Shown here in pieces: positions 8,452 through 54,171 of a stretch of DNA of 64,000 bases; position 1 is the stretch's first letter, and each line of letters opens with the position of its first letter. The notes beneath the pieces were generated by a model. It had not been told where the DNA came from and made no database searches. It was given only the letters and a program-made list of their open reading frames with translations. The position numbers and the translations under genes are program-made. Location of the stretch: positions 62,001-126,000 of the IMG/VR virus record IMGVR_UViG_3300021963_000021; one strand, 5' to 3'.

Positions 8452-8503
8452 CAATCACTCCGCATATGATGTTAGTATATTTATCCATACCCAAAAACTG
8501 TCC

Positions 8504-14613: not shown

Positions 14614-14621
14614 TATTTATA
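14614..14621 (-). promoter_or_regulatory. T4-type late promoter TATAAATA
   Basis: Exact T4 late consensus upstream of the 2028-aa gene. Related TAAATA sites lie at 1851, 8478, 21297, 26175, 29584, 29862, 33779, 34687 and 44073 (-), and 41626, 48942 and 54645 (+). Confidence 0.75.
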
Positions 14622-27407: not shown

Positions 27408-28973
27408 TTAAAATAAAATACTGTAGACCAGTGCTTTATGTTTACTTATTAGTTCATTTTTTACAGGATATGAAACAAGATCACCTGCGTTAAATTGAGT
27501 ATTGTTAACTACCCATTGCTCCCACGCTATAGTCTGTGACTCACTGTTATAATATAAACCTGTTCCACCAGGAGTTAGCACGTCTACATTAGATGTTAAC
27601 TCTCCTGCTGGGTTTTTGTATTCTATAGTTTCATCGTTACCAAAAATTATCGAACTGCCAGGTATGGCCGCCACTGGATCTAACGTACCAGTAGCATTAA
27701 AAATAGCAGCACGACTAAACTCAACACCTGCTGTGCCAAAAGTTCTTAGCTGTATATTTCCGTTAGTGTTGTTATTGGTAATTGCGTTATTTTGTACTTC
27801 AAGATCACCTAGTTCTATTCTATTGCTATAGAATGTTGTGATATCTTGATTGTCAATTACTACACGAACACGGCTTTCAGTTAATGCTAGGCTTCCGCCA
27901 GCTATCAACGAAACTGTAGGAATGCTGCTGTAAGCAGAACCAGCATCGACCATGTTAATGCCAGTGATCTGTTGGTAAGTATCATTCAGCGGATCAAGGT
28001 CAACTACTGCTACTGCTGAAGCAGTTATAGATCCTAATACAGAACCAAATGCCACTGACGCAGATTCGTAGTCATTACCAGAATTTAATACTTCAACTCC
28101 GTAGACACTCCATAGGATGTCAAAGGTTGCGTTTTCACCTAGTGCGTTTGCAGCTGTAGAGATATTGTTATTAGAGAGCGGCAATGTAACAAACTGTCCG
28201 CTGTTTATAACAGTGAAATCATCTATACCACCACCCGGCAATATAGCTTCAACTCGTATCACAGCATCGACCGCAGTTACGCCATCAGTGATAACCAACA
28301 GTTCACCAACAGCATAATCATTACCAGCTTGATTAATCTGAATATCTTGTATCTGCATCACAGCACGGCCAGTTGCGCCACCTGCGGTATCTTGTACGAT
28401 CACAAACGTGTCGTCACGTCTAATTTCGTTGTCTGGTTCTCTGTTTCTAATAGCAAGGTCTACATAACGTTTGTTTGGAATATCGTCATCTGCGTTTACC
28501 TGTGCTTCGTAGTCTGTGGTACCTAGCACTTTAACTACGCCGGTGCCTGTACCAATAAGTGTTAAGTCGCCACCGTCAGTGGTTGCGTTTGTTGTTATCT
28601 GTCTAATTCTTAACGAACTGTTGTTATAGGAAATGTTTGTTCCTATACGTTCGATAATTTCCCAACCGTTTGAAAGCTCGTCAAATCTAATGCTTGGGTA
28701 CGGATTCTCAAGACCAGGGGCATAGAAGCCCCTGTCTATTTCGATACCGGAGTAACCTTCAGTTACTCCGTCACCAGTTTCACCTTTGTTTAAAAGTATG
28801 ATATTGTCTTCGATTTCAAGATTTGTGGCCTGTATATAAACTGTTTCACCTTCGACTACTAGGTCGCCAGTGACACGAACTGCCCCAATGCCAGCACCAG
28901 TGTCTAAAACAACTGTGCCGCCTCGGGAAGTTTTAATCTTATAATCACCACTGGTCTGTAGGACTTGACTCAT
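27408..28973 (-). CDS. Virion structural/fibre protein (521 aa)
   Basis: GDLVVEG...IEDNIILLNKGE...SGIEIDRG motif and G.DY repeats common in large-phage structural proteins. Confidence 0.6.
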   Translation of the reverse strand: MSQVLQTSGDYKIKTSRGGTVVLDTGAGIGAVRVTGDLVVEGETVYIQATNLEIEDNIILLNKGETGDGVTEGYSGIEIDRGFYAPGLENPYPSIRFDELSNGWEIIERIGTNISYNNSSLRIRQITTNATTDGGDLTLIGTGTGVVKVLGTTDYEAQVNADDDIPNKRYVDLAIRNREPDNEIRRDDTFVIVQDTAGGATGRAVMQIQDIQINQAGNDYAVGELLVITDGVTAVDAVIRVEAILPGGGIDDFTVINSGQFVTLPLSNNNISTAANALGENATFDILWSVYGVEVLNSGNDYESASVAFGSVLGSITASAVAVVDLDPLNDTYQQITGINMVDAGSAYSSIPTVSLIAGGSLALTESRVRVVIDNQDITTFYSNRIELGDLEVQNNAITNNNTNGNIQLRTFGTAGVEFSRAAIFNATGTLDPVAAIPGSSIIFGNDETIEYKNPAGELTSNVDVLTPGGTGLYYNSESQTIAWEQWVVNNTQFNAGDLVSYPVKNELISKHKALVYSILF

Positions 28974-28987
28974 ACTTTAATTCCAAA

Positions 28988-29518
28988 TTAGATAGCTGTT
29001 AGGATGATTTGATCACCTGATGAATCGTTGTCTAAGAACCAAGTGTATCTGTTACCACTGAAGTCGATAGCAGTACGCTTGTTTAAGTGAGCGATTCTTG
29101 TAGCAGAAGCATCTGGACCACCTGCTGTGTAACCTGTTAGTCTCATTTCGCCTGCTGCTGCTGGTGTGCCGCTTACTAGTTTAGCAACTTGAACAAGTCT
29201 CACAGTTCCGTCTGTTGTTAGACCCGATCCTGATACTGTAGCTTTGAATATTTTGCCAACATAGGCATTGTCAACACCAAGTGCTGCCCAATTTGTTGTG
29301 CCTAATGAAAGTATAACGTATGTTGAACCTACCGCGATATTTTCGTCTGCTACTGTTGATACATCAGCAACTAGATAACGGTGAGCACCTTTTTGTTTGA
29401 TAATATATACATCGGTTTGATTTGAAGCAAAATATGCTTCGCAGCGGATGCCTGCTGCACTTACGTAAGTACCGAATACTTCAGTACCACGTACATCTCT
29501 TCGTACTGGACGTCCCAT
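28988..29518 (-). CDS. Structural protein, possibly head decoration (176 aa)
   Basis: Start MGRPV at 29518 follows AAGGAG SD; own late promoter; close to the major capsid gene. Confidence 0.55.
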   Translation of the reverse strand: MGRPVRRDVRGTEVFGTYVSAAGIRCEAYFASNQTDVYIIKQKGAHRYLVADVSTVADENIAVGSTYVILSLGTTNWAALGVDNAYVGKIFKATVSGSGLTTDGTVRLVQVAKLVSGTPAAAGEMRLTGYTAGGPDASATRIAHLNKRTAIDFSGNRYTWFLDNDSSGDQIILTAI

Positions 29519-29586
29519 TGTTTTCTCCTTAATTGACGTTCTAGGTCTACGCGGTGGGTACCGCATAATTAACTTAGATACTTTAT

Positions 29587-34682: not shown

Positions 34683-34695
34683 CTTGTATTTATAT

Positions 34696-36414
34696 TTAGG
34701 CTGCTGGGCCAGCTGGTGCTGGTGCTGCTGCGTCAATGGCTCCTTCTTCTGGAGCAGCCGGAGCCTGTGCTGCTAGATCGTCCGGTGCCTCGGCATCCTG
34801 TGATGCTGCTTCTGCTGAGATATCGTTAGGTGTAACTCCCACTGAACGCATTTCTGTAGAAGCGTTCATAGCGATGCCTACAGCTGAACCATTTTCTTCT
34901 TTCCACATACGTTCGTTTTCTGTGATTTCTTCTTGGCTTAGTCCTAGGAATCGTTTTAGAGCAAAACGTTTGCTCATATAAGGAACTTCTTGTAGTGCTG
35001 CGAATGTCTGTACACGAGCGTTATCAAGTTCACTTTGACGATATGCTGCGAAGTTTTGTGGAGGATTAAATTTCAACTCAAACAACGAGTTATCAATGCT
35101 CACACCTGATTTAATTAACCAACGCTTGAATTCTAGATCAAACTCTGTAATTAAGTTAGTCTGTAAACGCTTACAGTATTCGTTAAATCTAAGTTCTTGT
35201 ATGTAAGCAGTGCCTACTTTTCCGTCCGAGAAAGCTGCTTGACTATCATCAGGCATAGTAGGAAGGTAACTGCTTGGAATACGCAGAGCACGGAATAATT
35301 TGTTGGTAAAGTAACGTAGATCATCAATCTCGCCTAGATTTGTACCGCCTGGCAGTGTGTCAACTTTAGATCCACGACCTTCTGCTGTCTGCGGGAAGAA
35401 GTAGTCTTCTGATATGCTGAGAGGATTATAACTAGCGTCAATGACGTTTGCCCCGCCGCCTGTTGAGCTAGGAATACGTCTTTGATTTATTTCGTTTTTA
35501 ACACGTTCAACAAAGCTCATGGCCATGTGTGCGGGCATGTTGCCAACGTCTACATAAAACACTCTGCGCTCTGGAGCACGTTGTACACGGTAGATAATAA
35601 TAGCATCTTCAAGCAGTTCTTTCTGCTTGTAGACTTTGAATACTGATTCTAATAAACTGTTACCAAATGGATAGTTGTTGTCTAAACCTTCTGATAAACT
35701 TAGGTGTAAAACATGTTCTGCGTCTACAGCTAATTCATTTTGCTGTGTGCCAAATCTGCTGCCTGTCTGTTGCGGAGCAGATCCAACCATACCTCGTCCA
35801 AGTGATCCACCACTAACATAAGAAGCAGTGCCTGCCGGTGTGTTATGTGTATTAGGGTGCATGGTTGTTGCCACAAGATGCTGGAAGTTGATGTTTAAAT
35901 CACGAATAACATACTGCTCGGGCTTTTTACCTTCGCTTTCGTTTACAATAATTTTAACTAACTTAGCGGTATCTATGTAAAACAATTTCTGTGTTTCTGG
36001 ATCACGTATAAAGAAACAGTCACCGTATTTGAAGGCATTTCTAACTATACGGAACATTCTAGTTTCAAATTTTTGGAATCTAGACCATTTTTGTAGACCG
36101 TCTTTTAACAGCTTGACTTCTGTAGCTGTTGGCTGTCCTTTGAAATTAATTTGAAAAGATGTGTTGTTTTCTCTGTTGGCCTGTGTACAGAATTCGGCTA
36201 GAATATCTAACGCAGCATTAACTTCACTGTCCATGTCCATTGTGTCGTACTGCATGTAGCGTTCAACACGATTTGGTGTCCCTGCGTATACATCAGGCAA
36301 GAAACTTGAGTAGTTAGACTTAGCTGGGCCGGGACGAGAACCGTTGCCTAGAGGGCTAAAACTGCCGCCTTGTTTTCCAGTTGGTACCGGTGTAAAATAT
36401 TTTTTCCAGCTCAA
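34696..36414 (-). CDS. gp20: Portal protein, gp20-like
   Basis: LLEDAIIIYRVQRAPERRVFYVDVGNMP, EDYFFP...GRGS.V.TLPGG.NLGEIDD..YF motifs; TTG start with AGGAG SD. Confidence 0.97.
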   Translation of the reverse strand: MSWKKYFTPVPTGKQGGSFSPLGNGSRPGPAKSNYSSFLPDVYAGTPNRVERYMQYDTMDMDSEVNAALDILAEFCTQANRENNTSFQINFKGQPTATEVKLLKDGLQKWSRFQKFETRMFRIVRNAFKYGDCFFIRDPETQKLFYIDTAKLVKIIVNESEGKKPEQYVIRDLNINFQHLVATTMHPNTHNTPAGTASYVSGGSLGRGMVGSAPQQTGSRFGTQQNELAVDAEHVLHLSLSEGLDNNYPFGNSLLESVFKVYKQKELLEDAIIIYRVQRAPERRVFYVDVGNMPAHMAMSFVERVKNEINQRRIPSSTGGGANVIDASYNPLSISEDYFFPQTAEGRGSKVDTLPGGTNLGEIDDLRYFTNKLFRALRIPSSYLPTMPDDSQAAFSDGKVGTAYIQELRFNEYCKRLQTNLITEFDLEFKRWLIKSGVSIDNSLFELKFNPPQNFAAYRQSELDNARVQTFAALQEVPYMSKRFALKRFLGLSQEEITENERMWKEENGSAVGIAMNASTEMRSVGVTPNDISAEAASQDAEAPDDLAAQAPAAPEEGAIDAAAPAPAGPAA

Positions 36415-36430
36415 AATCTATCTCCTGTCC

Positions 36431-38968
36431 TTAGACACGGGCGGATGCCAGTGCTCTGACCTTAGCTCTTTCAAGATCTAATTCATCTTTGGTCAGAGAT
36501 ATAAGGGTCTTTACATTACTATTTAAGTTAACTACAAATTCTGCTGCGATAAATTGACCCGCTTTCATCATTAAACTGCTCTGTTGGGCAGGTGTTGTAA
36601 CAGCTTCTTCGTTGTGTAGAACAGCAAGGGTTCCTGAACCAAATTGACGGAATAGATTTCCATATTCGCCCAGTGTACCTTTACTAAACGATTCACCGTT
36701 TATATCAAGAACTGGTCTAGTAGGCGGTAATGGTATTCTTGCGCCTTCTAGCCATGTGTCTGCGTAGGCACCGATTAGATCACCAGTCATAACTTTACTA
36801 TCTTTAAGAGTTTCCATCAGTTGACGATTAGACTGTGGAGGGTTAGTTCCTGAAGCGATAGCATTTCCTGGACCCATAATACGATACACTGCTTTTACTG
36901 TGCCATCTTCATTTTCAATTTCAGCAGAGATATAATCATACGGATAAGCGCCATGGGATTTGTATCTGATTATACCGCTTATAGCAGCACGAATAGGATC
37001 ACCTTGTTTTACATTAGGTTGATTATATTGCCCAGTCCTTGTCATCCTGTCAACAATACCAGGTTTTTTCCTCATACTGATAGTAAGTAGTCCATCAACT
37101 ACAACAATACTGTCAATTTCCATACCATCTTTGTCAGCAGCCCGTAGATTTTTATAAAGATCTCCTCTGGCAATAGTTTTTCTTCCACCATTTATGTCTA
37201 TCATTTCTACAAGATTTGATTTAGCTGGATCAGCGTTGCTTAACGCAGCCATACTTGGTAGTGCTTCTCTACGTCTTTCTAACGCATTAATATCTCTATT
37301 AATTCTGTCTGCCCAAACATTCCCCATAACACTATCGCCAAACGCTAATCTCACACCAGCTAATTTCACATATAGATACAATCGTTGGGCTAACATTTCC
37401 ATTTGTCTTTTCATTATACTATTAGTGCTGTCATCGGAGAATACACTTAATATTGTGCTTATAGTATTGAAAACATTTAGAAAAAGTTTATTAAGACCTT
37501 TGCTGTAAGTTTCAATTTTTTCGTTAAATTTATATTTTGAAAGCATTACTCCTATCTGCTCAAAGTACGGAGTTAGGCGAATCATTACTTCGTCTTTGAA
37601 TTTCCTAATAGTCACAGTCATTTCATTCATTGCTGCTGTAAATGCTTCTTGTTTATTCATTTCTGCGAGTATTTTTGCTATGCGATCTTTAACCTGTTGA
37701 GAGGTCATCCCGTTTACTGCGCCAAAATTATTAAGGAATGCTCTAACTCCTTCTGTCGATTTGACCATATCGTCTAGACCTTCATAATTTGTCGACGTAG
37801 CGTTAAGCTGATTTTTTAATGCTTCAATGTCTTTGTTGATTCCCGGTATATATTTTGCCATTATAACTTCAGAAGCCTTAGAAAACTCTGCTGGCGGTGT
37901 AGATGAATCTGCTAGAGCTAACAGCTCTTCTAACATCGCTTTACTGTTTGGAGAAAAAGTGCCCAGCTGGCGACCCAACACAGACATTTCTTTTTGTCCC
38001 AGACCAGCAGATACTACATAGTCTCTACCAGCTTCGCCAAAGACTGCGTCGGCTAGTGTTAATGCTTTTAACATTTTATTACGTCTGCTTTCGCTGCCTT
38101 GTTCCAGGCTCAATCTAAACGCATCATTTTTCATAGATTCCATGACGCCCTGTTGTTGCTGCTCATTGTTTTTACCGGTCATCATGGTTATCATTTGCTG
38201 ATACTTTGTGTACTCAGCAAATGATTCTGTTTGTTTTTTATAAGCCATCTTGCTGCTGTCAGTGCTTCTAATGACATTAGTGTAATAGAACATGAATCGT
38301 TGACCAACATCGTCTACTGATAGTCCTAGATTTAATAAGTCCGATGCTAATGAATTTTTTCCTTCCCAGAGTACTTTGGTATATCTATTAAAGATTTTAG
38401 CACCTTGTGTTACAGTTCCTCCAACTTCGGCAAGTTTACGACTGTTTTGTGCTAACAGCGCAGCATAAGAATCTAAATCCATATGTGCTTCAGCTGCTGA
38501 CCTTCTTAGTTCTGTTATGCTATTTCCAAAAGAAGCACCCACTTTAGAAGTCTGCTGTAGTACATCGTTCCATCCTTCAAATACCTGTACAGCAGTTATC
38601 AGTGCGCCAGCAAGTTCGCCCATAGTTTCTCCAACTATAGGTACTTTTTTTACAAAATTATTATTAAGTGCCGATGCCCATTCTGAAGTCTTGTTAGACC
38701 CTTTTTCCATCAAGTTCGCAAAGTCTCTGGCTGTGGTCCTTCCCCACTTTTCAACTTTGTTAGAAAGATTTTTTATCTTGTTGGATTCTTTTTTAATACC
38801 AGAAACAAAAGAATTTCCTGGACCAGCTCCGCCTCCACCATCATTTATTTCGTCTTCTAGATCACTAAATGCGTTCATTAGATCACGCATTGTAGATTCG
38901 CTAGCAGCGTTGGCAAAAATCATTTTGCCATATTGATCTGAAATAAATTCTACGGTTCTATTAGCCAT
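36431..38968 (-). CDS. Tape-measure-like protein, paralogue B, with degenerate M23-like region
   Basis: Helical body similar to 38972..41584; GTL.VLHNEEAV C-terminal motif; PIRAAISG and GDLIG remnants without HxxxD/HxH. Confidence 0.65.
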   Translation of the reverse strand: MANRTVEFISDQYGKMIFANAASESTMRDLMNAFSDLEDEINDGGGGAGPGNSFVSGIKKESNKIKNLSNKVEKWGRTTARDFANLMEKGSNKTSEWASALNNNFVKKVPIVGETMGELAGALITAVQVFEGWNDVLQQTSKVGASFGNSITELRRSAAEAHMDLDSYAALLAQNSRKLAEVGGTVTQGAKIFNRYTKVLWEGKNSLASDLLNLGLSVDDVGQRFMFYYTNVIRSTDSSKMAYKKQTESFAEYTKYQQMITMMTGKNNEQQQQGVMESMKNDAFRLSLEQGSESRRNKMLKALTLADAVFGEAGRDYVVSAGLGQKEMSVLGRQLGTFSPNSKAMLEELLALADSSTPPAEFSKASEVIMAKYIPGINKDIEALKNQLNATSTNYEGLDDMVKSTEGVRAFLNNFGAVNGMTSQQVKDRIAKILAEMNKQEAFTAAMNEMTVTIRKFKDEVMIRLTPYFEQIGVMLSKYKFNEKIETYSKGLNKLFLNVFNTISTILSVFSDDSTNSIMKRQMEMLAQRLYLYVKLAGVRLAFGDSVMGNVWADRINRDINALERRREALPSMAALSNADPAKSNLVEMIDINGGRKTIARGDLYKNLRAADKDGMEIDSIVVVDGLLTISMRKKPGIVDRMTRTGQYNQPNVKQGDPIRAAISGIIRYKSHGAYPYDYISAEIENEDGTVKAVYRIMGPGNAIASGTNPPQSNRQLMETLKDSKVMTGDLIGAYADTWLEGARIPLPPTRPVLDINGESFSKGTLGEYGNLFRQFGSGTLAVLHNEEAVTTPAQQSSLMMKAGQFIAAEFVVNLNSNVKTLISLTKDELDLERAKVRALASARV

Positions 38969-38971
38969 GTA

Positions 38972-41584
38972 TTACCCTATTAGATTACCTGAAAGTTTTC
39001 TAGTATAGTCTATTTGTTCTCTATGTAAAGATTGACGGTCTTGGGTCAGTTGTATTAGTGTTGCCATGTTAGTGTTAAATTCAGAAATCAAATCTTGTAG
39101 ATTTACATTAGCGCCATTTTTAGCAATATTTTCCATTTGACTGATATCTAACTGAGCAGTGTCAGAAGGTGCTGCTCCCATGGTTCCTTTATTATATTTG
39201 TATATTTGTCTAGGATCTAAAACATTTTCATTAAATTCAAAACCTTTTGCTCTATAATCACCTTTGGTCATTTGGAAATGAAGATGTTTAGGAATAGCAG
39301 ATCCGTCTTTGTTAGTTCCAGTGTTACCCATGAAACCAATCATTTGATCTTTTGTTACCTTCTGTCCATTGATAGCTTCCATGGTATCTTTGCCTCGATC
39401 AGAAAGATGCATATAGATCGAAGTTAGATCAGCGTCGGGGTGATATATCTTAACCATATTTCCCTGAGGTTTACCTGTATCATAGCTGGAAGATGCTATA
39501 CCTGCAGCAATCGACCTAATAGGAATATCTGTGTCAGATTTATCTTTTGGTACTATGTCATTGCCATAGTGGTAATTGCCATTAGGGCCGTTTCTAGGTC
39601 CTACTCCGGATGTCATAACATAGTTTTCCATGTTAGCCATTGGAGTGCTTAGTCCTTCAAGTTTGCCTGAGCTGACTACTGTTGCTGTATCAGTTGTGAC
39701 ATTTCTACCCGAAGGAGTTACTACATTTCCTCCCGGCGCAGGAGCTGCCTGGGGTTTGCCTCCCGGTCCTGATACTATTCCGCCTTGAATCGGCAAGGCT
39801 TTTGCTCCTAGGAAATTAGAATCGCCTGTTATGCCTGTGACACCTAATGATTCTGCCCGTTGGACTCGTCTTGCTTTTGCCTGATTAACTTCAGCTCTTT
39901 CATCTTCAGGAGTTATTTTTCTGTCTTTATACTCACCTTCTTTGCTAAATGCTCTCATAAAAGCATATTTTGAAGTTATCATCATTCGTTCAAAAAAGTA
40001 TTCTATCTCACTTTTAATAAACTCTGTGCCTTTTTCTGATTGTAGATTAGTGAAAAAAGAATCTATAGTTGGTAGTGTTATAGCTGCTAGTTTAACTAAT
40101 GATTCGCCAAATTTTCCTAGCATTCCGGGAATATCGTATTTGCCTATCGCATCACTGAGTTTTCTAAAATAAGGAAGTAGTGCTATAATAAATTCTTTCT
40201 TAAACTCATCAAAGGCCAACGCCATGTCATTCAACAATTTTGTCAATGGACTTCGTTTCTTTGCTTCAGCATCTGCTGCGTCATAGGCATCAAGAGCATT
40301 GGCCACAGATGTTTTTCCATCTCTAGTAAATCTTATAAAACTTCCTGTAGCACCCGATAACGCTCTATTCAGTTCGTTGTTGCCGCCATCCATTTGAGAA
40401 TAGACCTTTAGAATCCTGTCATTGGCCTTGACAAAATCTATAATCCCTGCTGCGTTATCTCCGTAGGCTTTTCTTAGTATAGGTTCAAATTGTTCTACAG
40501 TCACAGTAGCATCTTTGGCTTTTGCCAGAATCTCTTGCATAGATATACCTGACTTGGCGATGCTTTGTTTTAGTATTTGAGCCTCCATGCCAAACGGTTC
40601 CATGCCTAGTGCGTTGGCTTTATAGAGTTCTGCTCCTGCTTTTCCGTACAAACCTGTGAACATAGCCAACGCTGCGTCCATTTTAGCTGCTCCAAGTGGA
40701 CCTTGTTTGATTTTTTCTCGTTGGTACTGTAGATCCTGTGTAGCCACAGCCATTTGTTCTTCAAGCTGAGCTGCTGTTACACCAGTGATCTTTGTTAATC
40801 TTTCTAGATTTAATTGATAAAATCCAAACTGTTTATTAAAATCAGCGTCAGATAATTTTTTTCTATCGGCTCCTCTCATAGTATTCTTCATGAAATTCAT
40901 TTGAGCTTCAGAAACGTCCTTGGCACTGTAACCAATCTGTCTAAAGATTTCTCGACCAACACCGCCTTGCTTGTTTATAACTTCATTGTAGTGCGCAAAG
41001 TCTTCAGCACCTTGTGTAACTGTGCCGCCAAATCCTGCTAGAAATTCTGAGTTTTTGTTTATAATGCCTACAAAATCATCCAACGACAAGTAAGTCCTTG
41101 CCGCTGCTAATCTCATTTCTAAAATGCTGTTGTTAAATGTTGCGCCCGATCTGCTGGATTTTTTAAGACTTTCGTTCCAAGATTCAAATTGCTCTATGGT
41201 GTAAGATATCGTATCGCCAAATATGCCCAGCACTCTACCAAATATTGGTATTTCTTTTAAAACTTGATTGCTTAGTACACTGGTATACGAACTGATTTTA
41301 TCATTACCCGCAGCCATAAGCCCAGCAAATGAACCCATAGCACCTACAACGTTACCTATCTGATCTGCTACAGCACCTGCGGCTTTGCCTAGTACCGAAG
41401 CCGGACTTACTGAGCTGCCCGGAGCTTCGGCGGGTCCGGAACTTGAAGAAGCATTAGACCTCTTCATTCCTTTGTTCATATTGTTTACACTACGAACTAT
41501 TTCCTGTAAGGTAGCCTCACTGGCAGCATTCATGATTGTGCCGGATAATTGATTACCTAATATTTCAACTTTTGTATTAGCCAT
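38972..41584 (-). CDS. Tape-measure-like protein, paralogue A, with M23 metallopeptidase domain
   Basis: Long helical region; YHYGND (HxxxD), GNMVKIYH, YMHL, IGFMGNTG and PKHLHFQ (HxH) M23 motifs. Confidence 0.8.
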   Translation of the reverse strand: MANTKVEILGNQLSGTIMNAASEATLQEIVRSVNNMNKGMKRSNASSSSGPAEAPGSSVSPASVLGKAAGAVADQIGNVVGAMGSFAGLMAAGNDKISSYTSVLSNQVLKEIPIFGRVLGIFGDTISYTIEQFESWNESLKKSSRSGATFNNSILEMRLAAARTYLSLDDFVGIINKNSEFLAGFGGTVTQGAEDFAHYNEVINKQGGVGREIFRQIGYSAKDVSEAQMNFMKNTMRGADRKKLSDADFNKQFGFYQLNLERLTKITGVTAAQLEEQMAVATQDLQYQREKIKQGPLGAAKMDAALAMFTGLYGKAGAELYKANALGMEPFGMEAQILKQSIAKSGISMQEILAKAKDATVTVEQFEPILRKAYGDNAAGIIDFVKANDRILKVYSQMDGGNNELNRALSGATGSFIRFTRDGKTSVANALDAYDAADAEAKKRSPLTKLLNDMALAFDEFKKEFIIALLPYFRKLSDAIGKYDIPGMLGKFGESLVKLAAITLPTIDSFFTNLQSEKGTEFIKSEIEYFFERMMITSKYAFMRAFSKEGEYKDRKITPEDERAEVNQAKARRVQRAESLGVTGITGDSNFLGAKALPIQGGIVSGPGGKPQAAPAPGGNVVTPSGRNVTTDTATVVSSGKLEGLSTPMANMENYVMTSGVGPRNGPNGNYHYGNDIVPKDKSDTDIPIRSIAAGIASSSYDTGKPQGNMVKIYHPDADLTSIYMHLSDRGKDTMEAINGQKVTKDQMIGFMGNTGTNKDGSAIPKHLHFQMTKGDYRAKGFEFNENVLDPRQIYKYNKGTMGAAPSDTAQLDISQMENIAKNGANVNLQDLISEFNTNMATLIQLTQDRQSLHREQIDYTRKLSGNLIG

Positions 41585-41625: not shown

Positions 41626-41652
41626 TAAATAATTCTGATACTACTATTTATA
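41626..41652. promoter_or_regulatory. Face-to-face late promoters for the divergent gp26-like and tape-measure genes
   Basis: TAAATA on + at 41626-41631; TATAAATA on - at 41645-41652. Confidence 0.65.
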
Positions 41653-41663
41653 GGTGTAAAAAC

Positions 41664-42584
41664 ATGCCAGATTTTGATCCAACTAATTCAGGAATTAGAC
41701 AGAAGCTAGGAGAGGCCGTGCCCACGCAAGCTGCTGCCACTAATCCGTTGGCTTCGTTTTTTAGACAGCCAAAACTTTTTATTTCGTTGCCTAGCAAAGG
41801 CAGATACTACCCAGCAGGTTCTCTAGACACTACAGAAACAGGAGAACATGCGGTATTTGCTATGACAGCCAGAGACGAGTTAATTTTTAAAACTCCAGAT
41901 GCTCTAATGAACGGTCAAGCTACTATAGAAGTAATCAAAAGTTGTATTCCAACTATCAAAAATCCATGGGTAATACCTAGCATTGACGTTGACGCTATTC
42001 TAGTAGCTATCAGAATGGCTACCTACGGCACAGAAATGGATGTAACCACAGGCTGTCCCAAGTGCGGAAACAGCAACGATTTTGCTGTGGACCTTAGAAC
42101 AGTTTTAGATAAGCTAAATCAAATCACTATCACAGAACAGGTAGAGATTGGCACAGACATGCTGATTCATCTAAGACCGTTAGACTACAGTCAAATGACA
42201 AAGACAGCTTTAAAAACTTTTGAACATCAAAGAATTTTTAACATCGTCAATGACGAATCCATGACTGAGGAAGATAAACTTAAGATGTTCCAAGAAAGTT
42301 TTATCAAACTCACAGACATCACTATCGATTCGGCTGTAAACTGTATCAGTAAAATTGAAAGCTCAGCTGGCAGCACAGACAATCCAGTTTACATCAAAGA
42401 GTTTTTACAGAAAGCTGATAAGTCAGTGTTCCAAAAAATCAATGAAGCTATCAACAAGTCCGCTGAAAAAGGTACAATGAGCTCGTTTTCAGCTACCTGT
42501 CAAAATGCCGAATGTAAACATGAGTGGAATGTGAACCTTACTATGGATCAATCGGATTTTTTCGGTCAAGGCTTTCGCAACTAA
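41664..42584 (+). CDS. gp26: Baseplate hub assembly protein / tail assembly chaperone, gp26-like
   Basis: LPSKG..Y, MTARDE, D.DAILVAIR.ATYG, CPKC and C..C motifs, ends DFF. Confidence 0.75.
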   Translation: MPDFDPTNSGIRQKLGEAVPTQAAATNPLASFFRQPKLFISLPSKGRYYPAGSLDTTETGEHAVFAMTARDELIFKTPDALMNGQATIEVIKSCIPTIKNPWVIPSIDVDAILVAIRMATYGTEMDVTTGCPKCGNSNDFAVDLRTVLDKLNQITITEQVEIGTDMLIHLRPLDYSQMTKTALKTFEHQRIFNIVNDESMTEEDKLKMFQESFIKLTDITIDSAVNCISKIESSAGSTDNPVYIKEFLQKADKSVFQKINEAINKSAEKGTMSSFSATCQNAECKHEWNVNLTMDQSDFFGQGFRN

Positions 42585-42793: not shown

Positions 42794-44047
42794 TTATCCA
42801 GCAGCGCCTGGAGCAGAAACCTTCTTCAGCATGTTCATGACCTTAGTTGTTGTCTGAGGATCAGCTTTTATCAATGCTGTGAACGCAGTTGCCAATGCCT
42901 GCTGTTGTTTCATAGATAGATTGCCACCGGTCATAACAGCTTTAACAGAAGTCTGTAGTAGACTTGGATCAACACCTGGTAACAGTTGAGCCATTTGTCT
43001 AGCATTTAGAGAACCTTCAACATCGCCACTGCCACCATCAGCTCCGCCGAGGCTTCCTGTGTTACCGCCAGCTGCCTGTGAAAAGCCCTGAGCAAATTTG
43101 CCCATCATGCCTTGTTTTGGTTTGTCTTGATCTAGACCCGGAGTTGTGCCTGAAGCACCTGTGTTGATGTTCTGACCTGCGCCTAGCTTGTAACTATCTT
43201 GTACAGCACGTAACAGTGCTTGGTCAATGATAGAACTTGGTAATACTTTTACATCGCCTTCTTCATCTAGTTCCATGTTTTCTAGATCTAGATTTTCAAA
43301 TGCTTTACCAAACTTGGCTTTAGCTGCTTTAAACCCACCACCTGTGGTTGCGCCTACGCCCTGTTTGGCTTTGAGTTTAGCTTTAAGATCAGCTTGTGGA
43401 TTTGCCGGCGCAGCAGCAGCTGGCTCAGCAGCAGTAGCGGCAGTTGAACCGCCAACACCTGCCAGTGATTTGATCCTTGCCAATGGATCAGTTGTTGTGC
43501 TTGGTACACCTGTTGGCACTGGATTTCCACTAGGATCAGTAACGCTGACATTGGCTTTGGGCGCAAATCCAGCAGGAGTATCTGCGGCTCCGCCGCCCGC
43601 GGCAGGAGTTTCTCCACCTGGTGGTACTTCGATATTACCAGTAGGTTCGATTTTTTGTTGAGCATCGCCACCGGCAGCAGCTTTTTTCTGTGCCATCCTG
43701 TCGCGGAATGCTGAAATGTTTGAAGAACCTTTGCCTAGAACTCCTGTTGGAGCACCAGCGTCATGACCTGCTATAATCTTTTCTACGCCCTGTGTAGGAT
43801 ATCCACTTTGTTGTAAGAACATCATCAACGCTTCGGAATTAGGTTGTTGTCCTGTTTTACCTAGGTACCTATTAAACTCTTTTCTAAGAGCAATAGCATC
43901 GTTACCAGCATCTAATACACCAGTTGATTTACTGTGTCCTAGCTTAGACGCTATTTTGCGTCCAGCACGACCAAATACTCCCATACCTGCGGGTGCTTCG
44001 TCAAGTTGTTGTAATTCAGATTCTGTTATAACGTCGTGGATTTTCAT
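42794..44047 (-). CDS. Low-complexity Ala/Gly-rich putative internal head (ejected) protein
   Basis: N-terminus MKIHDVITESELQQLDEA with I/L-x-E sites; internal RIKSLAGV resembles the scaffold C-terminus; TAAATA at 44073-44078. Confidence 0.55.
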   Translation of the reverse strand: MKIHDVITESELQQLDEAPAGMGVFGRAGRKIASKLGHSKSTGVLDAGNDAIALRKEFNRYLGKTGQQPNSEALMMFLQQSGYPTQGVEKIIAGHDAGAPTGVLGKGSSNISAFRDRMAQKKAAAGGDAQQKIEPTGNIEVPPGGETPAAGGGAADTPAGFAPKANVSVTDPSGNPVPTGVPSTTTDPLARIKSLAGVGGSTAATAAEPAAAAPANPQADLKAKLKAKQGVGATTGGGFKAAKAKFGKAFENLDLENMELDEEGDVKVLPSSIIDQALLRAVQDSYKLGAGQNINTGASGTTPGLDQDKPKQGMMGKFAQGFSQAAGGNTGSLGGADGGSGDVEGSLNARQMAQLLPGVDPSLLQTSVKAVMTGGNLSMKQQQALATAFTALIKADPQTTTKVMNMLKKVSAPGAAG

Positions 44048-44543: not shown

Positions 44544-44978
44544 TTATTTTGCCTTTTTATGTTCTTCTAGACGCTGTCTAAGTATGTTTGAGCCGCCAAC
44601 TCTGACGTTTATAATGCCATTATAATAGTCATCTGTTTCTAAAACTCTGCGCTCGAACTGCTCTCTAGCTTCAAGATAGCTCATTTCTGCCTTGGATTTA
44701 CAAAGATAAAGTATTTCTCTAGTGAAGTTTTCCGGACCTAATGCTTGGACGTCTGCGTTTAACCTATCAGATGAGCCGAAATAGTCGCGCCAATCGCTTT
44801 CTACTACAGATCTTCTTTTAAGTTTTTTGCCTTTGAGTGGAGGTTTAGTACGTTTGAATTGTGCTAGTTTCTTGCCTATGTACTTTTGCCCGGATTTAAG
44901 ATTCGTGATGAGATAAACAAAGCCAATGTAGCCTTCGGGTATTTCTTCTACGGGTTGATTTTGATATGTCCAAAGCAC
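44544..44978 (-). CDS. Stand-alone GIY-YIG (Seg-like) nuclease, catalytic domain only
   Basis: GFVYLITN...KYIGKK, YFGSS, FTREIL, conserved E (YLEAREQ) and YYN; 144 aa; GTG start 5 nt after TAACTA. Confidence 0.85.
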   Translation of the reverse strand: MLWTYQNQPVEEIPEGYIGFVYLITNLKSGQKYIGKKLAQFKRTKPPLKGKKLKRRSVVESDWRDYFGSSDRLNADVQALGPENFTREILYLCKSKAEMSYLEAREQFERRVLETDDYYNGIINVRVGGSNILRQRLEEHKKAK

Positions 44979-48011: not shown

Positions 48012-48041
48012 ATTATAGGCATATTTCATATGCTGTGTCAA
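48012..48041 (-). promoter_or_regulatory. Consensus sigma70-type promoter for gp47/gp46 with a palindrome in the spacer
   Basis: TTGACA-18 nt-TATAAT; the spacer contains GCATAT-N3-ATATGC (48019-48033). Confidence 0.75.
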
Positions 48042-48895
48042 TCATCAGTTCCCCATTCTGTAGCAGCTGGCAGCGTTGTTATTACTGCGGTTGCGTTAGG
48101 ATCCTTGCCACTGTTCTGACGAGTCCAACTTGGATTCATACCGTTCATTTCAAGGATATCGTCTCGAATGTTTTGATTGCGTTTTTCGATGTTGATGATG
48201 CGAACAAAACTATTGGTAACAGCAGCGGTATAGTAGGCAAAAGGATTATTAGATTTGCTTTCATCAAACTGTAGACCAATTTGTGTCAGCTGTAGAATAG
48301 CCTGCCCCTTCATCTCGTCGTTATAGGTGTAGCCACGGACGTTGCCACGAGTGGCATATCGTTCGCACAGCTTGATAAACATCCTAGCTAGGTTATCGGT
48401 CATTCGCCCGTGATCCTTGCTAAAGTGTCCATTTTGTAATCCGCCCTTCCAATGACTCTTTCCTACACAGATCAAGTTGTCATTCTCGTCAAACTTCCAA
48501 TGCTGGAATGGAGGAAAGTTAACTTTCTCGTGACTGTCAGCTGTGCTTTTGACAGTCTTCTTGCGCCCAGGTGCTAATGGAATATGTTCCCAACTGATAA
48601 TTCTAAAAACTAAATCAGTTTTGGCAACTTTTTTATAATCAACTTCGTAGTCTTTAGCAGAAGGTTTCTTTTCAGTTAGCTGTGCTCTTTGGTGTGCTTC
48701 TTTGCTGAGTTTGGCAGCTTTGTTACGTTTAGCTTCTGCCACAGTCCTGATGTTAATTTTTTCTAAACTAGGCAGAATTATGTCATAATCAGCGTATTCT
48801 GGCTGTGTATAAGAACAATAAGTGTTCTTGCTGCGGTGTATTTCTAGTAATAAATCTTTGTTAGTTAGGTACTTTATTTTCGGTTGTATGGTCAT
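48038..48895 (-). CDS. gp55: Late-transcription sigma factor, gp55-like
   Basis: YLTNKDLL, YTYNDEM, FDESKSNNPFAYYT...NSFVRIINIEK motifs; start MTIQPK after GAGG. Confidence 0.9.
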   Translation of the reverse strand: MTIQPKIKYLTNKDLLLEIHRSKNTYCSYTQPEYADYDIILPSLEKINIRTVAEAKRNKAAKLSKEAHQRAQLTEKKPSAKDYEVDYKKVAKTDLVFRIISWEHIPLAPGRKKTVKSTADSHEKVNFPPFQHWKFDENDNLICVGKSHWKGGLQNGHFSKDHGRMTDNLARMFIKLCERYATRGNVRGYTYNDEMKGQAILQLTQIGLQFDESKSNNPFAYYTAAVTNSFVRIINIEKRNQNIRDDILEMNGMNPSWTRQNSGKDPNATAVITTLPAATEWGTDD

Positions 48896-48966
48896 TAATG
48901 GTTCCTCAGAATACTTATATAATAGCACATTTTTAAGGAAATAAATAGACTAAAGGATACCAAAAT

Positions 48967-52563: not shown

Positions 52564-54171
52564 ATGTCAATTGAAAAAATATCTAGACGACAAGACAGCG
52601 ATACTAAAGTTTCCGGGCTTAAACTGGCTAAGGTTGTTGGCCACGGTGACAACAACTATATGGGGACTTTGTTTGTTTCTTTAAAAGGAAACGTCAACGA
52701 CGACTTTGGTCAGCAATCTCAGGCTATACCTGCTTACTATTGTCCTCCATTCTTTGGAGCAACTAACATTGCCTATAATGGAAACAATACAGGCAATGAT
52801 GCTGCGTTTAACGACACACAAAAATCTTATGGAATGTCTTTTGTTCCTCCTGATGTAGGAGTAACTGTACTAGTGGGATTTTTAGAAGACACTGGACAAT
52901 GTTTTTGGCTGGGGTGTGTGCCTGATATTAACACTAACCATATGGTTCCTGCTATCGGTCTATCGGAAGCAGTTGACGCTTCGTCGAAGGTAAGAAGCGA
53001 GTACGGTGCTGGTTTACCTTTACCAACCGCAGAATATAATAAGAATATCAATGCGGCAAAAACCACAGGCGTCAAAGATAATATTAAAAAACCTGTCCAT
53101 CCTATCGCTGGATTTATGTTGGCACAGGGACTGATAAGAGACTACGTTAGAGGTCCAGTTACGTCTAGTATGCGTAGAAATTTTATTTCTAATGTCTATG
53201 GAATTTTAACCCCTGGCCCGTTAGACAAAAGAGCAAACGCTACAAAAAAACCCGCAGGCAGTGCTGAAAATCCCACAGAACCTGTAGCAGTAAGTAGAGT
53301 AGGCGGAACACAGTTTGTCATGGACGATGGCGATGATCGATTCGTTAGAAAAACTCCCGCTGGAGATGGCCCCCCAGAATATGTACCCGCCGGTTCTGGA
53401 GATTCTAGAATTCCAATCAGTGAATACTTCCGTGTTCGTACAAGAACAGGACATCAAATTCTTTTACATAATACAGAAGATCTAATCTATATAGGTAACA
53501 GCAAAGGCACTGCGTGGATCGAATTAACCAGTAATGGTAAAATAGATATCTATGCCGCAGACAGTGTTAGCATACATTCAGAAGGCGATTTTAATTTACG
53601 TGCTGATAGAGATTTTAATATTGAAGCTGGAAGAAATGTTAATATTCGATCAGAGAAAAGTCTGTATGTAGAGTCGGGAGAAGACTATTCTTTGTTGATA
53701 GAAAAAGACAGCAAACTAAATTACAAAGGAAAGTTAGATCAAATAATAGCCAAAGATATTACCATGTCTTATCAGGGAAATTATGCGGTCAAGGTCACTG
53801 GAGATCACAAAATAATTGCCACTGGTGATATCCACACCAAGGGTAAAAATACTTTTATACAGTCCACAAACGACAGCAGTATGTTAACAGGTGCTAACCA
53901 TAAAACCACAGCAGCTAAGATATACATGAACAGTAGCATGGCAGCGGAACCTGCGAATTCCGCAGTGTCTGACCCAGATGAACCAACAAAACTAGAGCTT
54001 AGAGAGAATGATGTTGTTGATGCTACTCAGTCGTGGTCCGGGTCTGGATATCAAGCAACGGCACCTTTAAAGAGTATAATGAAACGCATACCTATGCACG
54101 AGCCATGGTATGGTCACGAAAACACAGATCCTGAAAAAGCAGGTCTGGAATCTACAGACAGAGATGTCTAA
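52564..54171 (+). CDS. gp5: Central spike, gp5/VgrG-like (OB fold plus beta-helix), no lysozyme domain
   Basis: SYGM.FVPPDVG..VLV.F, RTRTGHQIL, WIELTSNGKIDIY, beta-helix repeats, RIP.HEPW..HE tip. Confidence 0.8.
   Translation: MSIEKISRRQDSDTKVSGLKLAKVVGHGDNNYMGTLFVSLKGNVNDDFGQQSQAIPAYYCPPFFGATNIAYNGNNTGNDAAFNDTQKSYGMSFVPPDVGVTVLVGFLEDTGQCFWLGCVPDINTNHMVPAIGLSEAVDASSKVRSEYGAGLPLPTAEYNKNINAAKTTGVKDNIKKPVHPIAGFMLAQGLIRDYVRGPVTSSMRRNFISNVYGILTPGPLDKRANATKKPAGSAENPTEPVAVSRVGGTQFVMDDGDDRFVRKTPAGDGPPEYVPAGSGDSRIPISEYFRVRTRTGHQILLHNTEDLIYIGNSKGTAWIELTSNGKIDIYAADSVSIHSEGDFNLRADRDFNIEAGRNVNIRSEKSLYVESGEDYSLLIEKDSKLNYKGKLDQIIAKDITMSYQGNYAVKVTGDHKIIATGDIHTKGKNTFIQSTNDSSMLTGANHKTTAAKIYMNSSMAAEPANSAVSDPDEPTKLELRENDVVDATQSWSGSGYQATAPLKSIMKRIPMHEPWYGHENTDPEKAGLESTDRDV

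What the first reader, a model, noticed from the sequence alone, without database searches (positions are those of the whole stretch)
36431..41584. Tandem tape-measure paralogues: one intact and one apparently dead M23 peptidase
Seen: two adjacent 870- and 845-aa genes share the N-terminus (MAN..VE...NAASE.T), G.TVTQGA and F.NSI.E.R..AA blocks, and C-terminal NxN..TLI.LT. Only the 870-aa copy has HxxxD and HxH zinc ligands; the other keeps PIRAAISG and GDLIG remnants. Established: phages usually have a single tape measure. Inference: a heteromeric tape measure with catalytic and non-catalytic chains, or alternative versions for different cell walls.
Basis: partly seen in the sequence, partly recalled or inferred. 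Interest (0 to 1): 0.62.

Follow-up and report, generated by a model that had tools for sequence, protein, structure and literature searches.

The report
Paired tape-measure genes, one enzyme-dead
A giant T4-like phage and at least eight uncultured relatives carry two old, co-expressed copies of the probable tail-length ruler protein, one with a working cell-wall-cutting domain and one with a conserved but dead version of it, which suggests a two-part ruler not described before.

Summary
Two adjacent minus-strand genes, 38972-41584 (870 aa) and 36431-38968 (845 aa), are full-length paralogues (BLASTP 23% identity, E 3e-46). The 870-aa copy has an intact M23 peptidase: Pfam 48.9 bits, with H672, D676, H726, H767 and H769 all present. 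The 845-aa copy keeps a homologous domain (hhalign probability 97.9%; model matches LytM-type structures at Z 6.0-6.5) but has lost all five residues.

They lie between a T4 gp26-like hub gene and the portal gene of a 364-kb jumbo phage related to PA5oct, Serratia BF and Vibrio 2.275.O. Those cultured relatives have one gene here, and in PA5oct and BF it encodes a virion protein.

Tape-measure identity is likely but not proven. The evidence is sub-threshold TMP_3 hits found only in these two genes, tape-measure PHROG hits in homologues, language-model neighbours, swappable lytic domains and synteny.

The pair is old and kept. The same hub, copy 1, copy 2, portal order occurs in eight or more metagenomic lineages, and the two positions form two sister clades. 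Segment lengths match between the copies. The genes are 3 nt apart behind one late-promoter-like site.

A mixed (heteromeric) ruler is the best reading, but it is untested. I rate it a new variant of a known kind, of moderate interest.

The parts
41645..41652 (-). TATAAATA, a T4-late-promoter-like site about 60 nt upstream of the copy-1 ATG
   Evidence: There are only 3 such sites in the window, which is not more than chance gives. The genome encodes a gp55-like late sigma factor at 48038-48928. Promoter function is inferred.
38972..41584 (-). Copy 1 (P0001, 870 aa): probable tape measure chain with an active M23 endopeptidase domain
40580..41311 (-). Copy 1 conserved N-terminal core (aa 92-335). 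This is the family-defining domain and includes GGTVTQGA and F.NSI.E.R..AA
   Evidence: A profile of it finds 5,766 clusters at 50% identity at E<=1e-3. There is a weak TMP_3 hit (E 4e-3) and a phrog_14121 hit (6e-3).
41306..41407 (-). Copy-1-specific Gly/Ala-rich uncharged segment (aa about 60-93, QIGNVVGAMGSFAGLMAAG). The matching stretch of copy 2 is polar and Lys-rich
   Evidence: the difference holds in 7 of 7 gene pairs.
39221..39619 (-). Copy 1 M23 peptidase domain (aa 656-788) with H672, D676, H726, H767 and H769
   Evidence: Pfam 48.9 bits. Profile matches to solved M23 chains. The five residues are invariant in the M23-bearing copy-1 relatives.
38975..39214 (-). Copy 1 conserved C-terminal tail (aa 791-870), ending in a long helix (N.N..TLI.LT)
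36431..38968 (-). Copy 2 (P0002, 845 aa): paralogous chain with a dead LytM-type domain. Its ATG lies 3 nt after the copy-1 stop codon
37973..38704 (-). Copy 2 conserved N-terminal core (aa 89-332)
   Evidence: Weak TMP_3 hit (E 5.5e-4) and phrog_14121 hit (E 1.3e-6).
36746..37021 (-). Copy 2 degenerate M23 (dLytM) domain (aa about 650-741). All five catalytic positions are replaced
   Evidence: hhalign against the copy-1 M23 region: probability 97.9%, E 4e-13. HMM built from the copy-1 domain: E 4e-5. Alignment. AF2 pLDDT is 72-94 over this stretch. VIA-align Z 6.0-6.5 to SpoIIQ, EnvC, Csd3 and LytM.
36434..36706 (-). Copy 2 conserved C-terminal tail (aa 755-845: GTLG..GNLF..FG.GT...LH.EAV.TPAQ, then a terminal helix)
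   Evidence: It is the most conserved part of copy 2 (41% mean identity between orthologues).
41664..42584 (+). Divergently transcribed baseplate hub gene (T4 gp26-like, PF12322 in relatives)
34696..36414 (-). Portal gene (T4 gp20-like) directly downstream, probably in the same late operon

Best explanation
These are two anciently duplicated, co-expressed copies of the tail tape measure (tail-length ruler) protein of a T4-like jumbo myophage.

Shown:
- They are full-length paralogues with the same segment plan. The plan is an N-terminal motif, a 244-aa core, a middle region of about 225 aa, a payload domain and a C-terminal tail of about 90 aa.
- Copy 1 carries a complete M23 zinc-endopeptidase site.
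- Copy 2 carries a homologous domain in which all five catalytic residues are replaced. It is a LytM-type 'dead' domain like those of EnvC, NlpD and SpoIIQ.
- The pair is conserved in the same order in eight or more diverged lineages.

Inferred:
- Both chains use the same conserved ends to dock in the baseplate hub and at the tail terminator.
- They are therefore built side by side into the same helical bundle inside the tail tube, as a mixed oligomer such as 2+1 or 3+3, and together set tail length.
- On sheath contraction the bundle is expelled into the periplasm.
- There the copy-1 M23 domain cuts peptidoglycan cross-links, and its Gly/Ala-rich segment may engage the membrane.
- Copy 2 supplies a non-catalytic role, such as cell-wall binding, holding or regulating the active domain, or a purely structural part.

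My confidence in each layer:
- paralogy: 0.99
- dead M23 domain: 0.9
- pair retained by selection: 0.9
- tape measure identity: 0.8
- both chains in one tail (heteromer): about 0.5
For: Paralogy: BLASTP E 3e-46 over the full length.

Active versus dead domain:
- Pfam M23 is found in P0001 only.
- hhalign of the copy-2 C-terminal region against the copy-1 M23 region gives probability 97.9%, E 4e-13.
- All five catalytic positions are replaced in P0002, P0006, L005 copy 2, P0070, P0068 and P0062, while the G.P[IV].A...G.I and V..G.LIG strands are kept.
- The P0002 model has pLDDT 72-94 over residues 650-740.
- Its best structural matches are LytM-family chains: SpoIIQ Z 6.5 (rmsd 3.0, 83 aa), EnvC 6.5 and 6.4, Csd3 6.3, LytM 6.0.

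Tape measure identity:
- The genes sit beside a divergent gp26-like hub gene.
- The only TMP_3 matches in the whole 364-kb genome are in these two genes (5.5e-4 and 4e-3).
- Both match phrog_14121, the family of Serratia BF gp249 (virion structural protein, same locus), which itself hits three tape-measure PHROGs at about 3e-6.
- Distant family members hit six tape-measure PHROGs, down to 5e-16. They carry swappable lytic domains: GH19, SLT, CHAP, Phage_lysozyme2, Amidase_2 and VgrG3-like C.
- Language-model neighbours include PF10145 and PF20155 clusters.
- hhalign links the family to PA5oct gp335, a mass-spectrometry-confirmed virion protein at the same locus (E 5e-5).
- No T4 gp29 homologue and no other tape-measure match exists in the genome.

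Retention and co-expression:
- The order hub, copy 1, copy 2, portal is found in the window, a JGI 11-kb contig, L005, L006, L007, L017, L018 and L020. L019 is probable: its contig starts inside the upstream gene.
- In a tree of 99 sequences, 8 of 8 known position-1 proteins and 9 of 9 known position-2 proteins fall in two sister clades. Support for the joint clade is 0.956.
- Segment lengths are the same in both copies. Copy 1 and copy 2 of one genome are no more alike than copies from different genomes, so there is no sign of gene conversion.
- The gap between the genes is 3 nt, and the only late-promoter-like site lies upstream of copy 1.
- A second paralogue-specific difference, Gly/Ala-rich versus polar at about aa 60-93, holds in 7 of 7 pairs.

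Precedent: in myophage A-1(L) the tape measure is a six-fold helical bundle in which only three C-terminal helices form the distal tripod (PMC10966104).
Against: - No curated tape-measure model is passed: TMP_3 scores 13.8-17.4 bits against a 41-bit cut-off.
- There is no detectable similarity to T4 gp29.
- There are no virion data for this uncultured phage.
- The complex prediction gave no verdict.
- The successful fold used an alignment that included active M23 relatives, so it leans towards that fold. The Z scores are below 8, Foldseek found nothing at E<=0.001, and the fold from copy-2 sequences alone failed (pLDDT 36).
- The basal nodes of the two paralogue clades are weakly supported (0.23 and 0.30).
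- 'One active plus one dead chain' is not universal. In L020 copy 2 has the intact M23, and copy 1 has a different domain that matches an endolysin-annotated PHROG. In L006 and L007 the copy-2 payload is unrecognisable.
Confidence: 0.5

Rival explanations
1. Alternative rulers. Each paralogue forms its own homo-oligomer, so a burst contains two kinds of virion: tails carrying the active peptidase and tails carrying the dead-domain chain. This would be bet-hedging or specialisation for different envelopes.
For: Both copies keep the same N- and C-terminal docking motifs and the same length plan, so either could fill the tube alone. Payload domains differ between lineages. Other tail genes in the window are also duplicated: two tail fibres and two wedge-like giants.
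Against: In this phage copy 2 has no catalytic residues, so tails containing only copy 2 would carry no active M23 domain. The 3-nt spacing behind one promoter-like site gives no means of choosing one copy over the other. Nothing prevents mixing of chains with the same ends.
Confidence: 0.15
2. Copy 2 is not a ruler chain in the finished tail. It would be a paralogue recruited as an assembly helper for copy 1 (a chaperone or scaffold, as lambda gpG/gpGT are for gpH), or a separately ejected periplasmic factor whose dead LytM domain binds or activates another wall enzyme, as EnvC and NlpD do for amidases.
For: The closest structural matches of the dead domain include EnvC, SpoIIQ and DipM, all of which are non-catalytic partner-binding LytM domains. 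Copy 2 evolves faster and lacks the copy-1 Gly/Ala-rich segment.
Against: Copy 2 keeps the full 845-aa ruler plan with an indel-free core. Its most conserved part is the C-terminal tail shared with single-copy family members, which is unexpected for a mere chaperone. The Z scores of the LytM-type matches are tied within 1 unit, so a preference for dead members means nothing.
Confidence: 0.15
3. The family is not a tape measure at all. It would be another virion protein, for instance an ejected internal or inner-body protein carrying a wall hydrolase, encoded at the start of the head gene block.
For: The genes lie directly upstream of portal, protease, scaffold and capsid genes. Curated tape-measure thresholds are not met. 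There is no gp29 similarity. The related phage phAPEC6 has a capsid inner body (PMC7247149).
Against: The only tape-measure-like signals in the genome are in these genes. Homologues match tape-measure PHROGs and language-model neighbours are tape-measure families. The neighbouring gene is the gp26-like hub gene, as in T4 where gp29 lies in the gp26/51/27/28/29 block. The phAPEC6 79.7-kDa protein encoded next to the portal was seen with a single peptide, which suggests a low-copy protein rather than a bulk inner-body protein. No other candidate ruler was found.
Confidence: 0.15
4. Copy 2 is a redundant duplicate that is decaying and has no function.
For: It has lost all catalytic residues. It has long branches in the tree and few detectable relatives by word search.
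Against: It is an intact ORF of about 835-925 aa in every one of nine or more lineages that are only 25-30% identical to one another. The core is indel-free. The C-terminal tail is more conserved than that of copy 1 (41% versus 32%). The dead domain keeps its structural strands in six proteins.
Confidence: 0.03

Closest known systems
Single-gene counterparts at the same locus: Serratia phage BF gp249 (phrog_14121), Pseudomonas phage PA5oct gp335, Vibrio phage 2.275.O NVP2275O_437
   Same: They occupy the same locus next to the gp26-like hub gene: between hub and portal in BF and PA5oct, and beside the hub with a different orientation in Vibrio 2.275.O. They are 619-798 aa long. BF gp249 and PA5oct gp335 are annotated as virion structural proteins. 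Profile-level homology is detectable: phrog_14121 hits P0002 at 1.3e-6, and hhalign of the family against gp335 gives E 5e-5.
   Different: Each of these phages has one gene, not two. None of the three is annotated with a lytic domain or named as a tape measure. Pairwise BLASTP against P0001 and P0002 is not significant.
Tape measure proteins with C-terminal wall-hydrolase domains (T5 Pb2; mycobacteriophage TMPs with Rpf- or M23-like motifs), from established knowledge, not tested here
   Same: A long ruler protein carries a peptidoglycan-cleaving domain near its C-terminus and is expelled into the envelope at infection. Within this family the lytic domain is modular: M23, Amidase_2, GH19, SLT, CHAP and lysozyme-like.
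   Different: Those are single genes forming homo-oligomers. Here there are two diverged paralogues, and one has a conserved dead domain.
T4 gp29 (baseplate hub subunit and tail length determinator)
   Same: It belongs to a T4-like myophage and is encoded in the block that starts with a divergent gp26 hub gene. It would have the same expected role.
   Different: There is no detectable sequence similarity (hhalign probability 0.2%; no match in the genome). gp29 is 590 aa, has no lytic domain and is single-copy.
Degenerate LytM (dLytM) factors: EnvC, NlpD, SpoIIQ, DipM
   Same: They have the M23 fold with the zinc and catalytic residues lost, retained for a non-enzymatic role. They are among the top structural matches of the P0002 domain (Z 5.8-6.5).
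   Different: Those are cellular division or sporulation proteins. No partner of the phage domain is known, and it sits inside a ruler-like protein of about 845 aa.

Membership tests
Phage tail tape measure protein (functional class) | Passes a curated tape-measure model (Pfam TMP_3 PF20155, PhageMin_Tail PF10145 or TMP_2 PF06791) above its threshold | tested here: not met
   Only sub-threshold hits. TMP_3 scores 13.8 bits in P0002, and 17.4 and 14.7 bits in the genome scan against a 41-bit cut-off. The best family member reaches E 3.2e-4.
Phage tail tape measure protein (functional class) | Encoded among tail or baseplate genes, and the only such candidate in the genome | tested here: met
   The genes are adjacent to the gp26-like hub gene. 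No gp29 homologue, no phrog_794 or phrog_167 match and no other TMP_3 match occurs in the 364-kb genome.
Phage tail tape measure protein (functional class) | Homologues are recognised tape measures or virion tail proteins | tested here: inconclusive
   Two to three of 44 distant homologues hit each of six tape-measure PHROGs, best 5e-16, but outside the shared core. BF gp249 hits three tape-measure PHROGs at about 3e-6. BF gp249 and PA5oct gp335 are virion proteins, but their location in the virion is not known. Atlas neighbours include PF10145 and PF20155 clusters, which is a lead only.
Phage tail tape measure protein (functional class) | Long, mostly helical protein lying in the tube lumen, whose length sets tail length | not testable with these tools
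   No virion or tail measurements exist for this uncultured phage. Only the C-terminal helix (aa 793-844) was modelled.
Peptidase M23 (active LytM-type metallopeptidase) | HxxxD and HxH zinc ligands plus the catalytic histidines, and Pfam PF01551 above its threshold | tested here: met
   This row is for P0001: 48.9 bits against 28.7. H672, D676, H726, H767 and H769 are present, and they are invariant in the M23-bearing copy-1 relatives. For P0002 the feature is not met: there is no Pfam hit and all five positions are replaced.
Degenerate LytM (dLytM) domain | Homologous to M23 and adopts its fold, but lacks the metal and catalytic residues | tested here: met
   For P0002: hhalign probability 97.9%, E 4e-13. 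HMM E 4e-5. Residues replaced. The model has pLDDT 72-94, with Z 6.0-6.5 to SpoIIQ, EnvC, Csd3 and LytM. Caveats: the alignment used for the fold included active relatives, and Z is below 8.
Degenerate LytM (dLytM) domain | Binds or activates a partner enzyme, as EnvC and NlpD do with amidases | not testable with these tools
   No partner is known. The one complex job (copy-1 against copy-2 C-terminal regions) gave no verdict.
T4 gp29 family | Sequence or profile similarity to T4 gp29 | tested here: not met
   hhalign probability 0.2%. No match to gp29 in the genome at E<=10.

The most novel reading that the evidence does not exclude
The tail ruler of this jumbo-phage clade is an obligate two-component hetero-oligomer, for example three copy-1 plus three copy-2 chains in one lumen bundle, with a division of labour. 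One chain carries a membrane-active Gly/Ala-rich segment and a wall hydrolase. The other is a polar chain whose payload is a regulatory or binding dLytM domain, or in other lineages a second enzyme. This would be the first two-gene tape measure, and a system in which two different payloads are delivered through one tail.
Probability: 0.4. Interest if true: 0.7.

Novelty: new variant of a known kind. Interest (0 to 1): 0.55.

Why it matters
Tape measure proteins are treated as single-gene homo-oligomeric rulers, and I found no described case of a conserved two-gene ruler in four full-text searches. A stably inherited pair with matched lengths and different payloads bears on three things. First, it would show that the tail lumen can hold a mixed bundle. 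Second, it speaks to the unresolved three-versus-six chain question raised by structures such as A-1(L). Third, it would show how phages diversify the enzymes they inject without changing tail length. It also gives a name and a testable role to a very large unannotated family (5,766 clusters at 50% identity). That family includes the unnamed virion proteins next to the portal gene in BF and the Vibrio phage 2.275.O, and more weakly the one in PA5oct.

Tried and rejected
- tblastn of both proteins against 50,697 phage records found no hit at 1e-5.
- The viral-contig pattern scan with P0002 found nothing.
- Pairwise BLASTP of P0001 and P0002 against PA5oct gp335 and Vibrio 437 was not significant. 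Only profile methods link them.
- T4 gp29 showed no similarity by hhalign or by genome search.
- A profile of the whole family against PDB sequences matched M23 domains only, with no solved tape measure.
- The third word search, using P0002 residues 600-845, found nothing new.
- The first fold, from six copy-2 sequences only, failed with pLDDT 36.
- Foldseek of the second model against the PDB found nothing at E<=0.001. The top rows were RNA polymerase beta' sandwich-barrel inserts, with EnvC at rank 37.
- Complex prediction on P0001 645-870 with P0002 620-845 gave no verdict (score 0.07), so it is not evidence either way.
- phmmer of the gp5-like hub protein against PDB sequences found no hit, so I make no claim about whether it has a lysozyme domain.
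- I rejected the idea that the copies are homogenised by gene conversion: same-genome identity equals cross-genome identity.
- I rejected the pseudogene reading of copy 2 (see the rival explanations).
- The reads tools were not used, because expression of an uncultured phage would not settle the question.
Full report
**1. The observation**

Every quoted motif is in the translations.

BLASTP aligns the proteins end to end at 23% identity with E 3e-46. A 244-residue N-terminal core (P0001 92-335, P0002 89-332) aligns without any indel.

Pfam finds Peptidase_M23 in P0001 (residues 671-775, 48.9 bits, cut-off 28.7). In P0002 it finds nothing except a sub-threshold TMP_3 hit (E 0.049).

**2. The genome**

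The window is bases 62001-126000 of a 363,943-bp virus record that CheckV rates complete.

The genes around the pair are T4-like:
- Downstream on the same strand are the portal, the prohead protease, an unnamed 363-aa protein where BF has its scaffold gene, and the major capsid protein.
- Upstream and divergent is a gp26-like baseplate hub gene.
- Further on are gp46/47-like nuclease subunits, a gp55-like late sigma factor, a gp5-like hub protein and wedge subunits.

The capsid protein is about 70% identical to those of the jumbo phages Vibrio 2.275.O, Sinorhizobium Phosso, Pseudomonas PA5oct, Serratia BF, Yersinia fHe-Yen9-04 and the Erwinia SNUABM phages.

**3. Is it the tape measure?**

Direct sequence evidence is weak:
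- No phage record matches either protein by tblastn.
- T4 gp29 shows no similarity.
- No curated tape-measure model is passed.

The indirect evidence is consistent, however:
- (a) In the whole genome the only TMP_3 matches are at the homologous core position of these two genes (E 5.5e-4 and 4e-3).
- (b) Both genes match phrog_14121 (1.3e-6 and 6e-3). This is the family of Serratia BF gp249 and Vibrio 2.275.O protein 437.
- (c) BF gp249 lies between the hub and portal genes and is annotated as a virion structural protein. It also hits three tape-measure PHROGs at about 3e-6.
- (d) PA5oct gp335 is a mass-spectrometry-confirmed virion protein at the same locus. It aligns co-linearly with the family profile (hhalign E 5e-5, probability 67%).
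- (e) A profile of the core finds 5,766 representative clusters, in proteins of 700-1,500 aa with the core at about residues 100-340.
- (f) A sample of 44 distant members shows hits to six tape-measure PHROGs, down to 5e-16. It also shows a changing set of wall-hydrolase domains: GH19, SLT, CHAP, Phage_lysozyme2 and VgrG3-like C. Closer relatives carry M23 and Amidase_2. This is the modular architecture known from tape measures such as T5 Pb2 (established knowledge, not tested here).
- (g) Language-model neighbours of P0002 residues 1-600 include PF10145 and PF20155 clusters. This is a lead only.
- (h) In T4 itself gp29 lies in the block that begins with a divergent gp26.
- (i) In the related phage phAPEC6, the 79.7-kDa protein encoded next to the portal was detected in virions with a single peptide (PMC7247149). 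That suggests a low-copy component.

I put tape measure identity at about 0.8. The main alternative is another ejected virion protein.

**4. Is copy 2 a dead M23?**

In P0001 the HxxxD motif is H672/D676, the catalytic histidine is H726, and HxH is H767/H769. These are invariant in the M23-bearing copy-1 relatives.

The evidence that P0002 holds a degenerate homologue:
- A three-sequence profile of the copy-2 region matches the copy-1 M23 profile with probability 97.9%, E 4e-13, over 105 columns.
- An HMM built from the copy-1 domains hits P0070 (4e-10), P0068 (2e-6), P0002 (4e-5) and P0062 (1e-3).
- In the alignment all five catalytic positions are replaced in P0002, P0006, L005 copy 2, P0070, P0068 and P0062. 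The structural strands G.P[IV].A...G.I and V..G.LIG persist.

Folding gave mixed results:
- A fold from copy-2 sequences alone failed (pLDDT 36).
- With 23 sequences, including active relatives, the model has pLDDT 72-94 over P0002 residues 650-740.
- Foldseek gave nothing significant.
- The exhaustive aligner placed LytM-family chains at the top for this domain: SpoIIQ Z 6.5 (rmsd 3.0, 83 aa), EnvC 6.5 and 6.4, Csd3 6.3, StM23 6.0, LytM 6.0, then NMB0315, Csd1-Csd2, DipM and lysostaphin.
- The Z scores are middling and the alignment favours this fold, so I count the structure as supporting rather than independent evidence.

The conclusion that copy 2 holds a catalytically dead LytM-type domain rests mainly on the profile comparisons.

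**5. Is the pair kept by selection?**

The order hub, copy 1, copy 2, portal is found in the following places:

| Place | Copy 1 | Copy 2 |
|---|---|---|
| Window | 870 aa, M23 | 845 aa, dead M23 |
| JGI 11-kb contig | P0017, 863 aa, M23 | P0006, 838 aa, dead M23 |
| L005 | 867 aa, M23 | 854 aa, dead M23 |
| L006 | 867 aa, Amidase_2 | 835 aa, unrecognised |
| L007 | 876 aa, weak Phage_lysozyme2 | 924 aa, unrecognised |
| L017 | 847 aa, M23 | 854 aa, dead M23 |
| L018 | 858 aa, no domain found | 886 aa, dead M23 |
| L019 (probable) | cut by contig end | 855 aa, dead M23 |
| L020 | 837 aa, endolysin-PHROG-like | 851 aa, intact M23 |

Single-gene loci are L008 and L021 among the metagenomic contigs. 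PA5oct, BF and Vibrio 2.275.O also have one gene.

In a tree of 99 family members, 8 of 8 proteins known to be in position 1 and 9 of 9 known to be in position 2 fall in two sister clades of 35 and 20 leaves. The joint clade has support 0.956. The basal node of each clade is weak (0.23 and 0.30). The next outgroup is single-copy (an earlier quick IQ-TREE agrees). This fits one old duplication.

Other signs of retention:
- Both copies keep the same segment lengths: N-terminus 83-99 aa (88-91 in most), core 244-245, middle 218-257, tail 80-99.
- Copy 1 and copy 2 of one genome are no more alike than copies from different genomes (31.1% versus 31.0% in the core), so gene conversion is not the cause.
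- The C-terminal tail of copy 2 is its best-conserved part (41%).

A second systematic difference exists. At about residues 60-93, copy 1 has an uncharged Gly/Ala-rich stretch and copy 2 a polar, Lys-rich one, in 7 of 7 pairs. Copy 2 is therefore not a decaying duplicate.

**6. Expression**

The copy-1 stop codon and the copy-2 ATG are 3 nt apart, and relatives show 0-3 nt. The only TATAAATA near the pair lies about 60 nt upstream of copy 1. The motif count in the window is not above chance, so the promoter is an inference. The likely unit is a late operon of copy 1, copy 2 and the portal gene.

**7. Mechanism**

Both chains keep the N-terminal motif and the C-terminal helix. In solved myophage tails, the tape measure C-terminal helices form a tripod at the distal end of the tail, inside a lumen bundle that looks six-fold (A-1(L), PMC10966104).

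Three features point to co-assembly of both chains in one tail lumen: matched lengths, shared ends and coupled expression.

Expulsion into the periplasm at contraction would then deliver the active M23 domain of copy 1 to the wall. Copy 2 would bring a non-catalytic LytM-type domain whose role (binding, restraint or activation, structure) is open. These steps are inferred.

The only direct test I could run gave no verdict.

L020 shows that the active M23 can sit on copy 2 while copy 1 carries another domain that matches an endolysin-annotated PHROG. The general rule therefore seems to be two chains with two payloads, rather than one live and one dead.

**8. Novelty**

Full-text searches for two tape measures, heterotrimeric tape measures or tape-measure paralogues found no description of such a system. 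The papers on related jumbo phages that I read do not name this protein.

The elements are known kinds: a tape measure carrying a lytic domain, and a dead LytM domain. The conserved two-gene arrangement is a new variant. Interest is moderate: 0.55 now, and about 0.7 if a mixed ruler is shown.

Noticed in passing
window 2191-8454 and 8504-14590 (minus strand): Two adjacent giant tail-fibre genes (2087 and 2028 aa, both phrog_9851) are paralogues at 34-42% identity over most of their length. Tandem duplication of tail genes is therefore not limited to the ruler.
   Followed up: partly
window 15322-21177 and 21315-26156 (minus strand): A second adjacent pair of giant paralogues (1951 and 1613 aa, about 40% identity over 1,140 aa) matches baseplate-wedge PHROGs 13163, 1469, 32294 and 19601.
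   Followed up: partly
L020:3486-8556: In one relative the roles are reversed. The position-2 protein (P0049, 851 aa) has an intact M23 site. The position-1 protein (837 aa, 78% identical to P0007) carries a different C-terminal domain with a WRNNNPGNL motif that hits phrog_873 'endolysin' at 4e-8.
   Followed up: partly
window 14614-14621, 34687-34694, 41645-41652 (minus strand): The window holds only three TATAAATA sites, which is not more than chance. The sites at 14614-14621 and 41645-41652 lie just upstream of minus-strand gene starts (14590 and 41584). The site at 34687-34694 lies just downstream of the portal stop codon.
   Followed up: no
window 44544-44978 (minus strand): There is a SegE-like GIY-YIG homing endonuclease gene (listed under phrog_447 as 'NAD synthetase') between the hub region and the gp46/47-like genes. 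It sits at the same place in relatives L005, L006, L007, L018 and L020.
   Followed up: no
window 52564-54171 (plus strand): A gp5-like hub protein (535 aa, PHROG 'baseplate hub subunit and tail lysozyme') has no phmmer match to any PDB sequence, T4 gp5 included. Whether it keeps a lysozyme domain is open. If it does not, the M23 domain on copy 1 could be the main virion wall enzyme.
   Followed up: partly
window 42794-44047 (minus strand), 27408-28973 and 28988-29566 (minus strand): ORFs of 417, 521 and 192 aa inside the structural block have no PHROG match.
   Followed up: no
L003:6469-8592 (Vibrio phage 2.275.O NVP2275O_438): In the Vibrio phage the single ruler-like gene is followed by an unrelated 707-aa hypothetical protein, and both are co-oriented with the hub gene rather than with the portal. 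The locus has been rearranged relative to the window.
   Followed up: no
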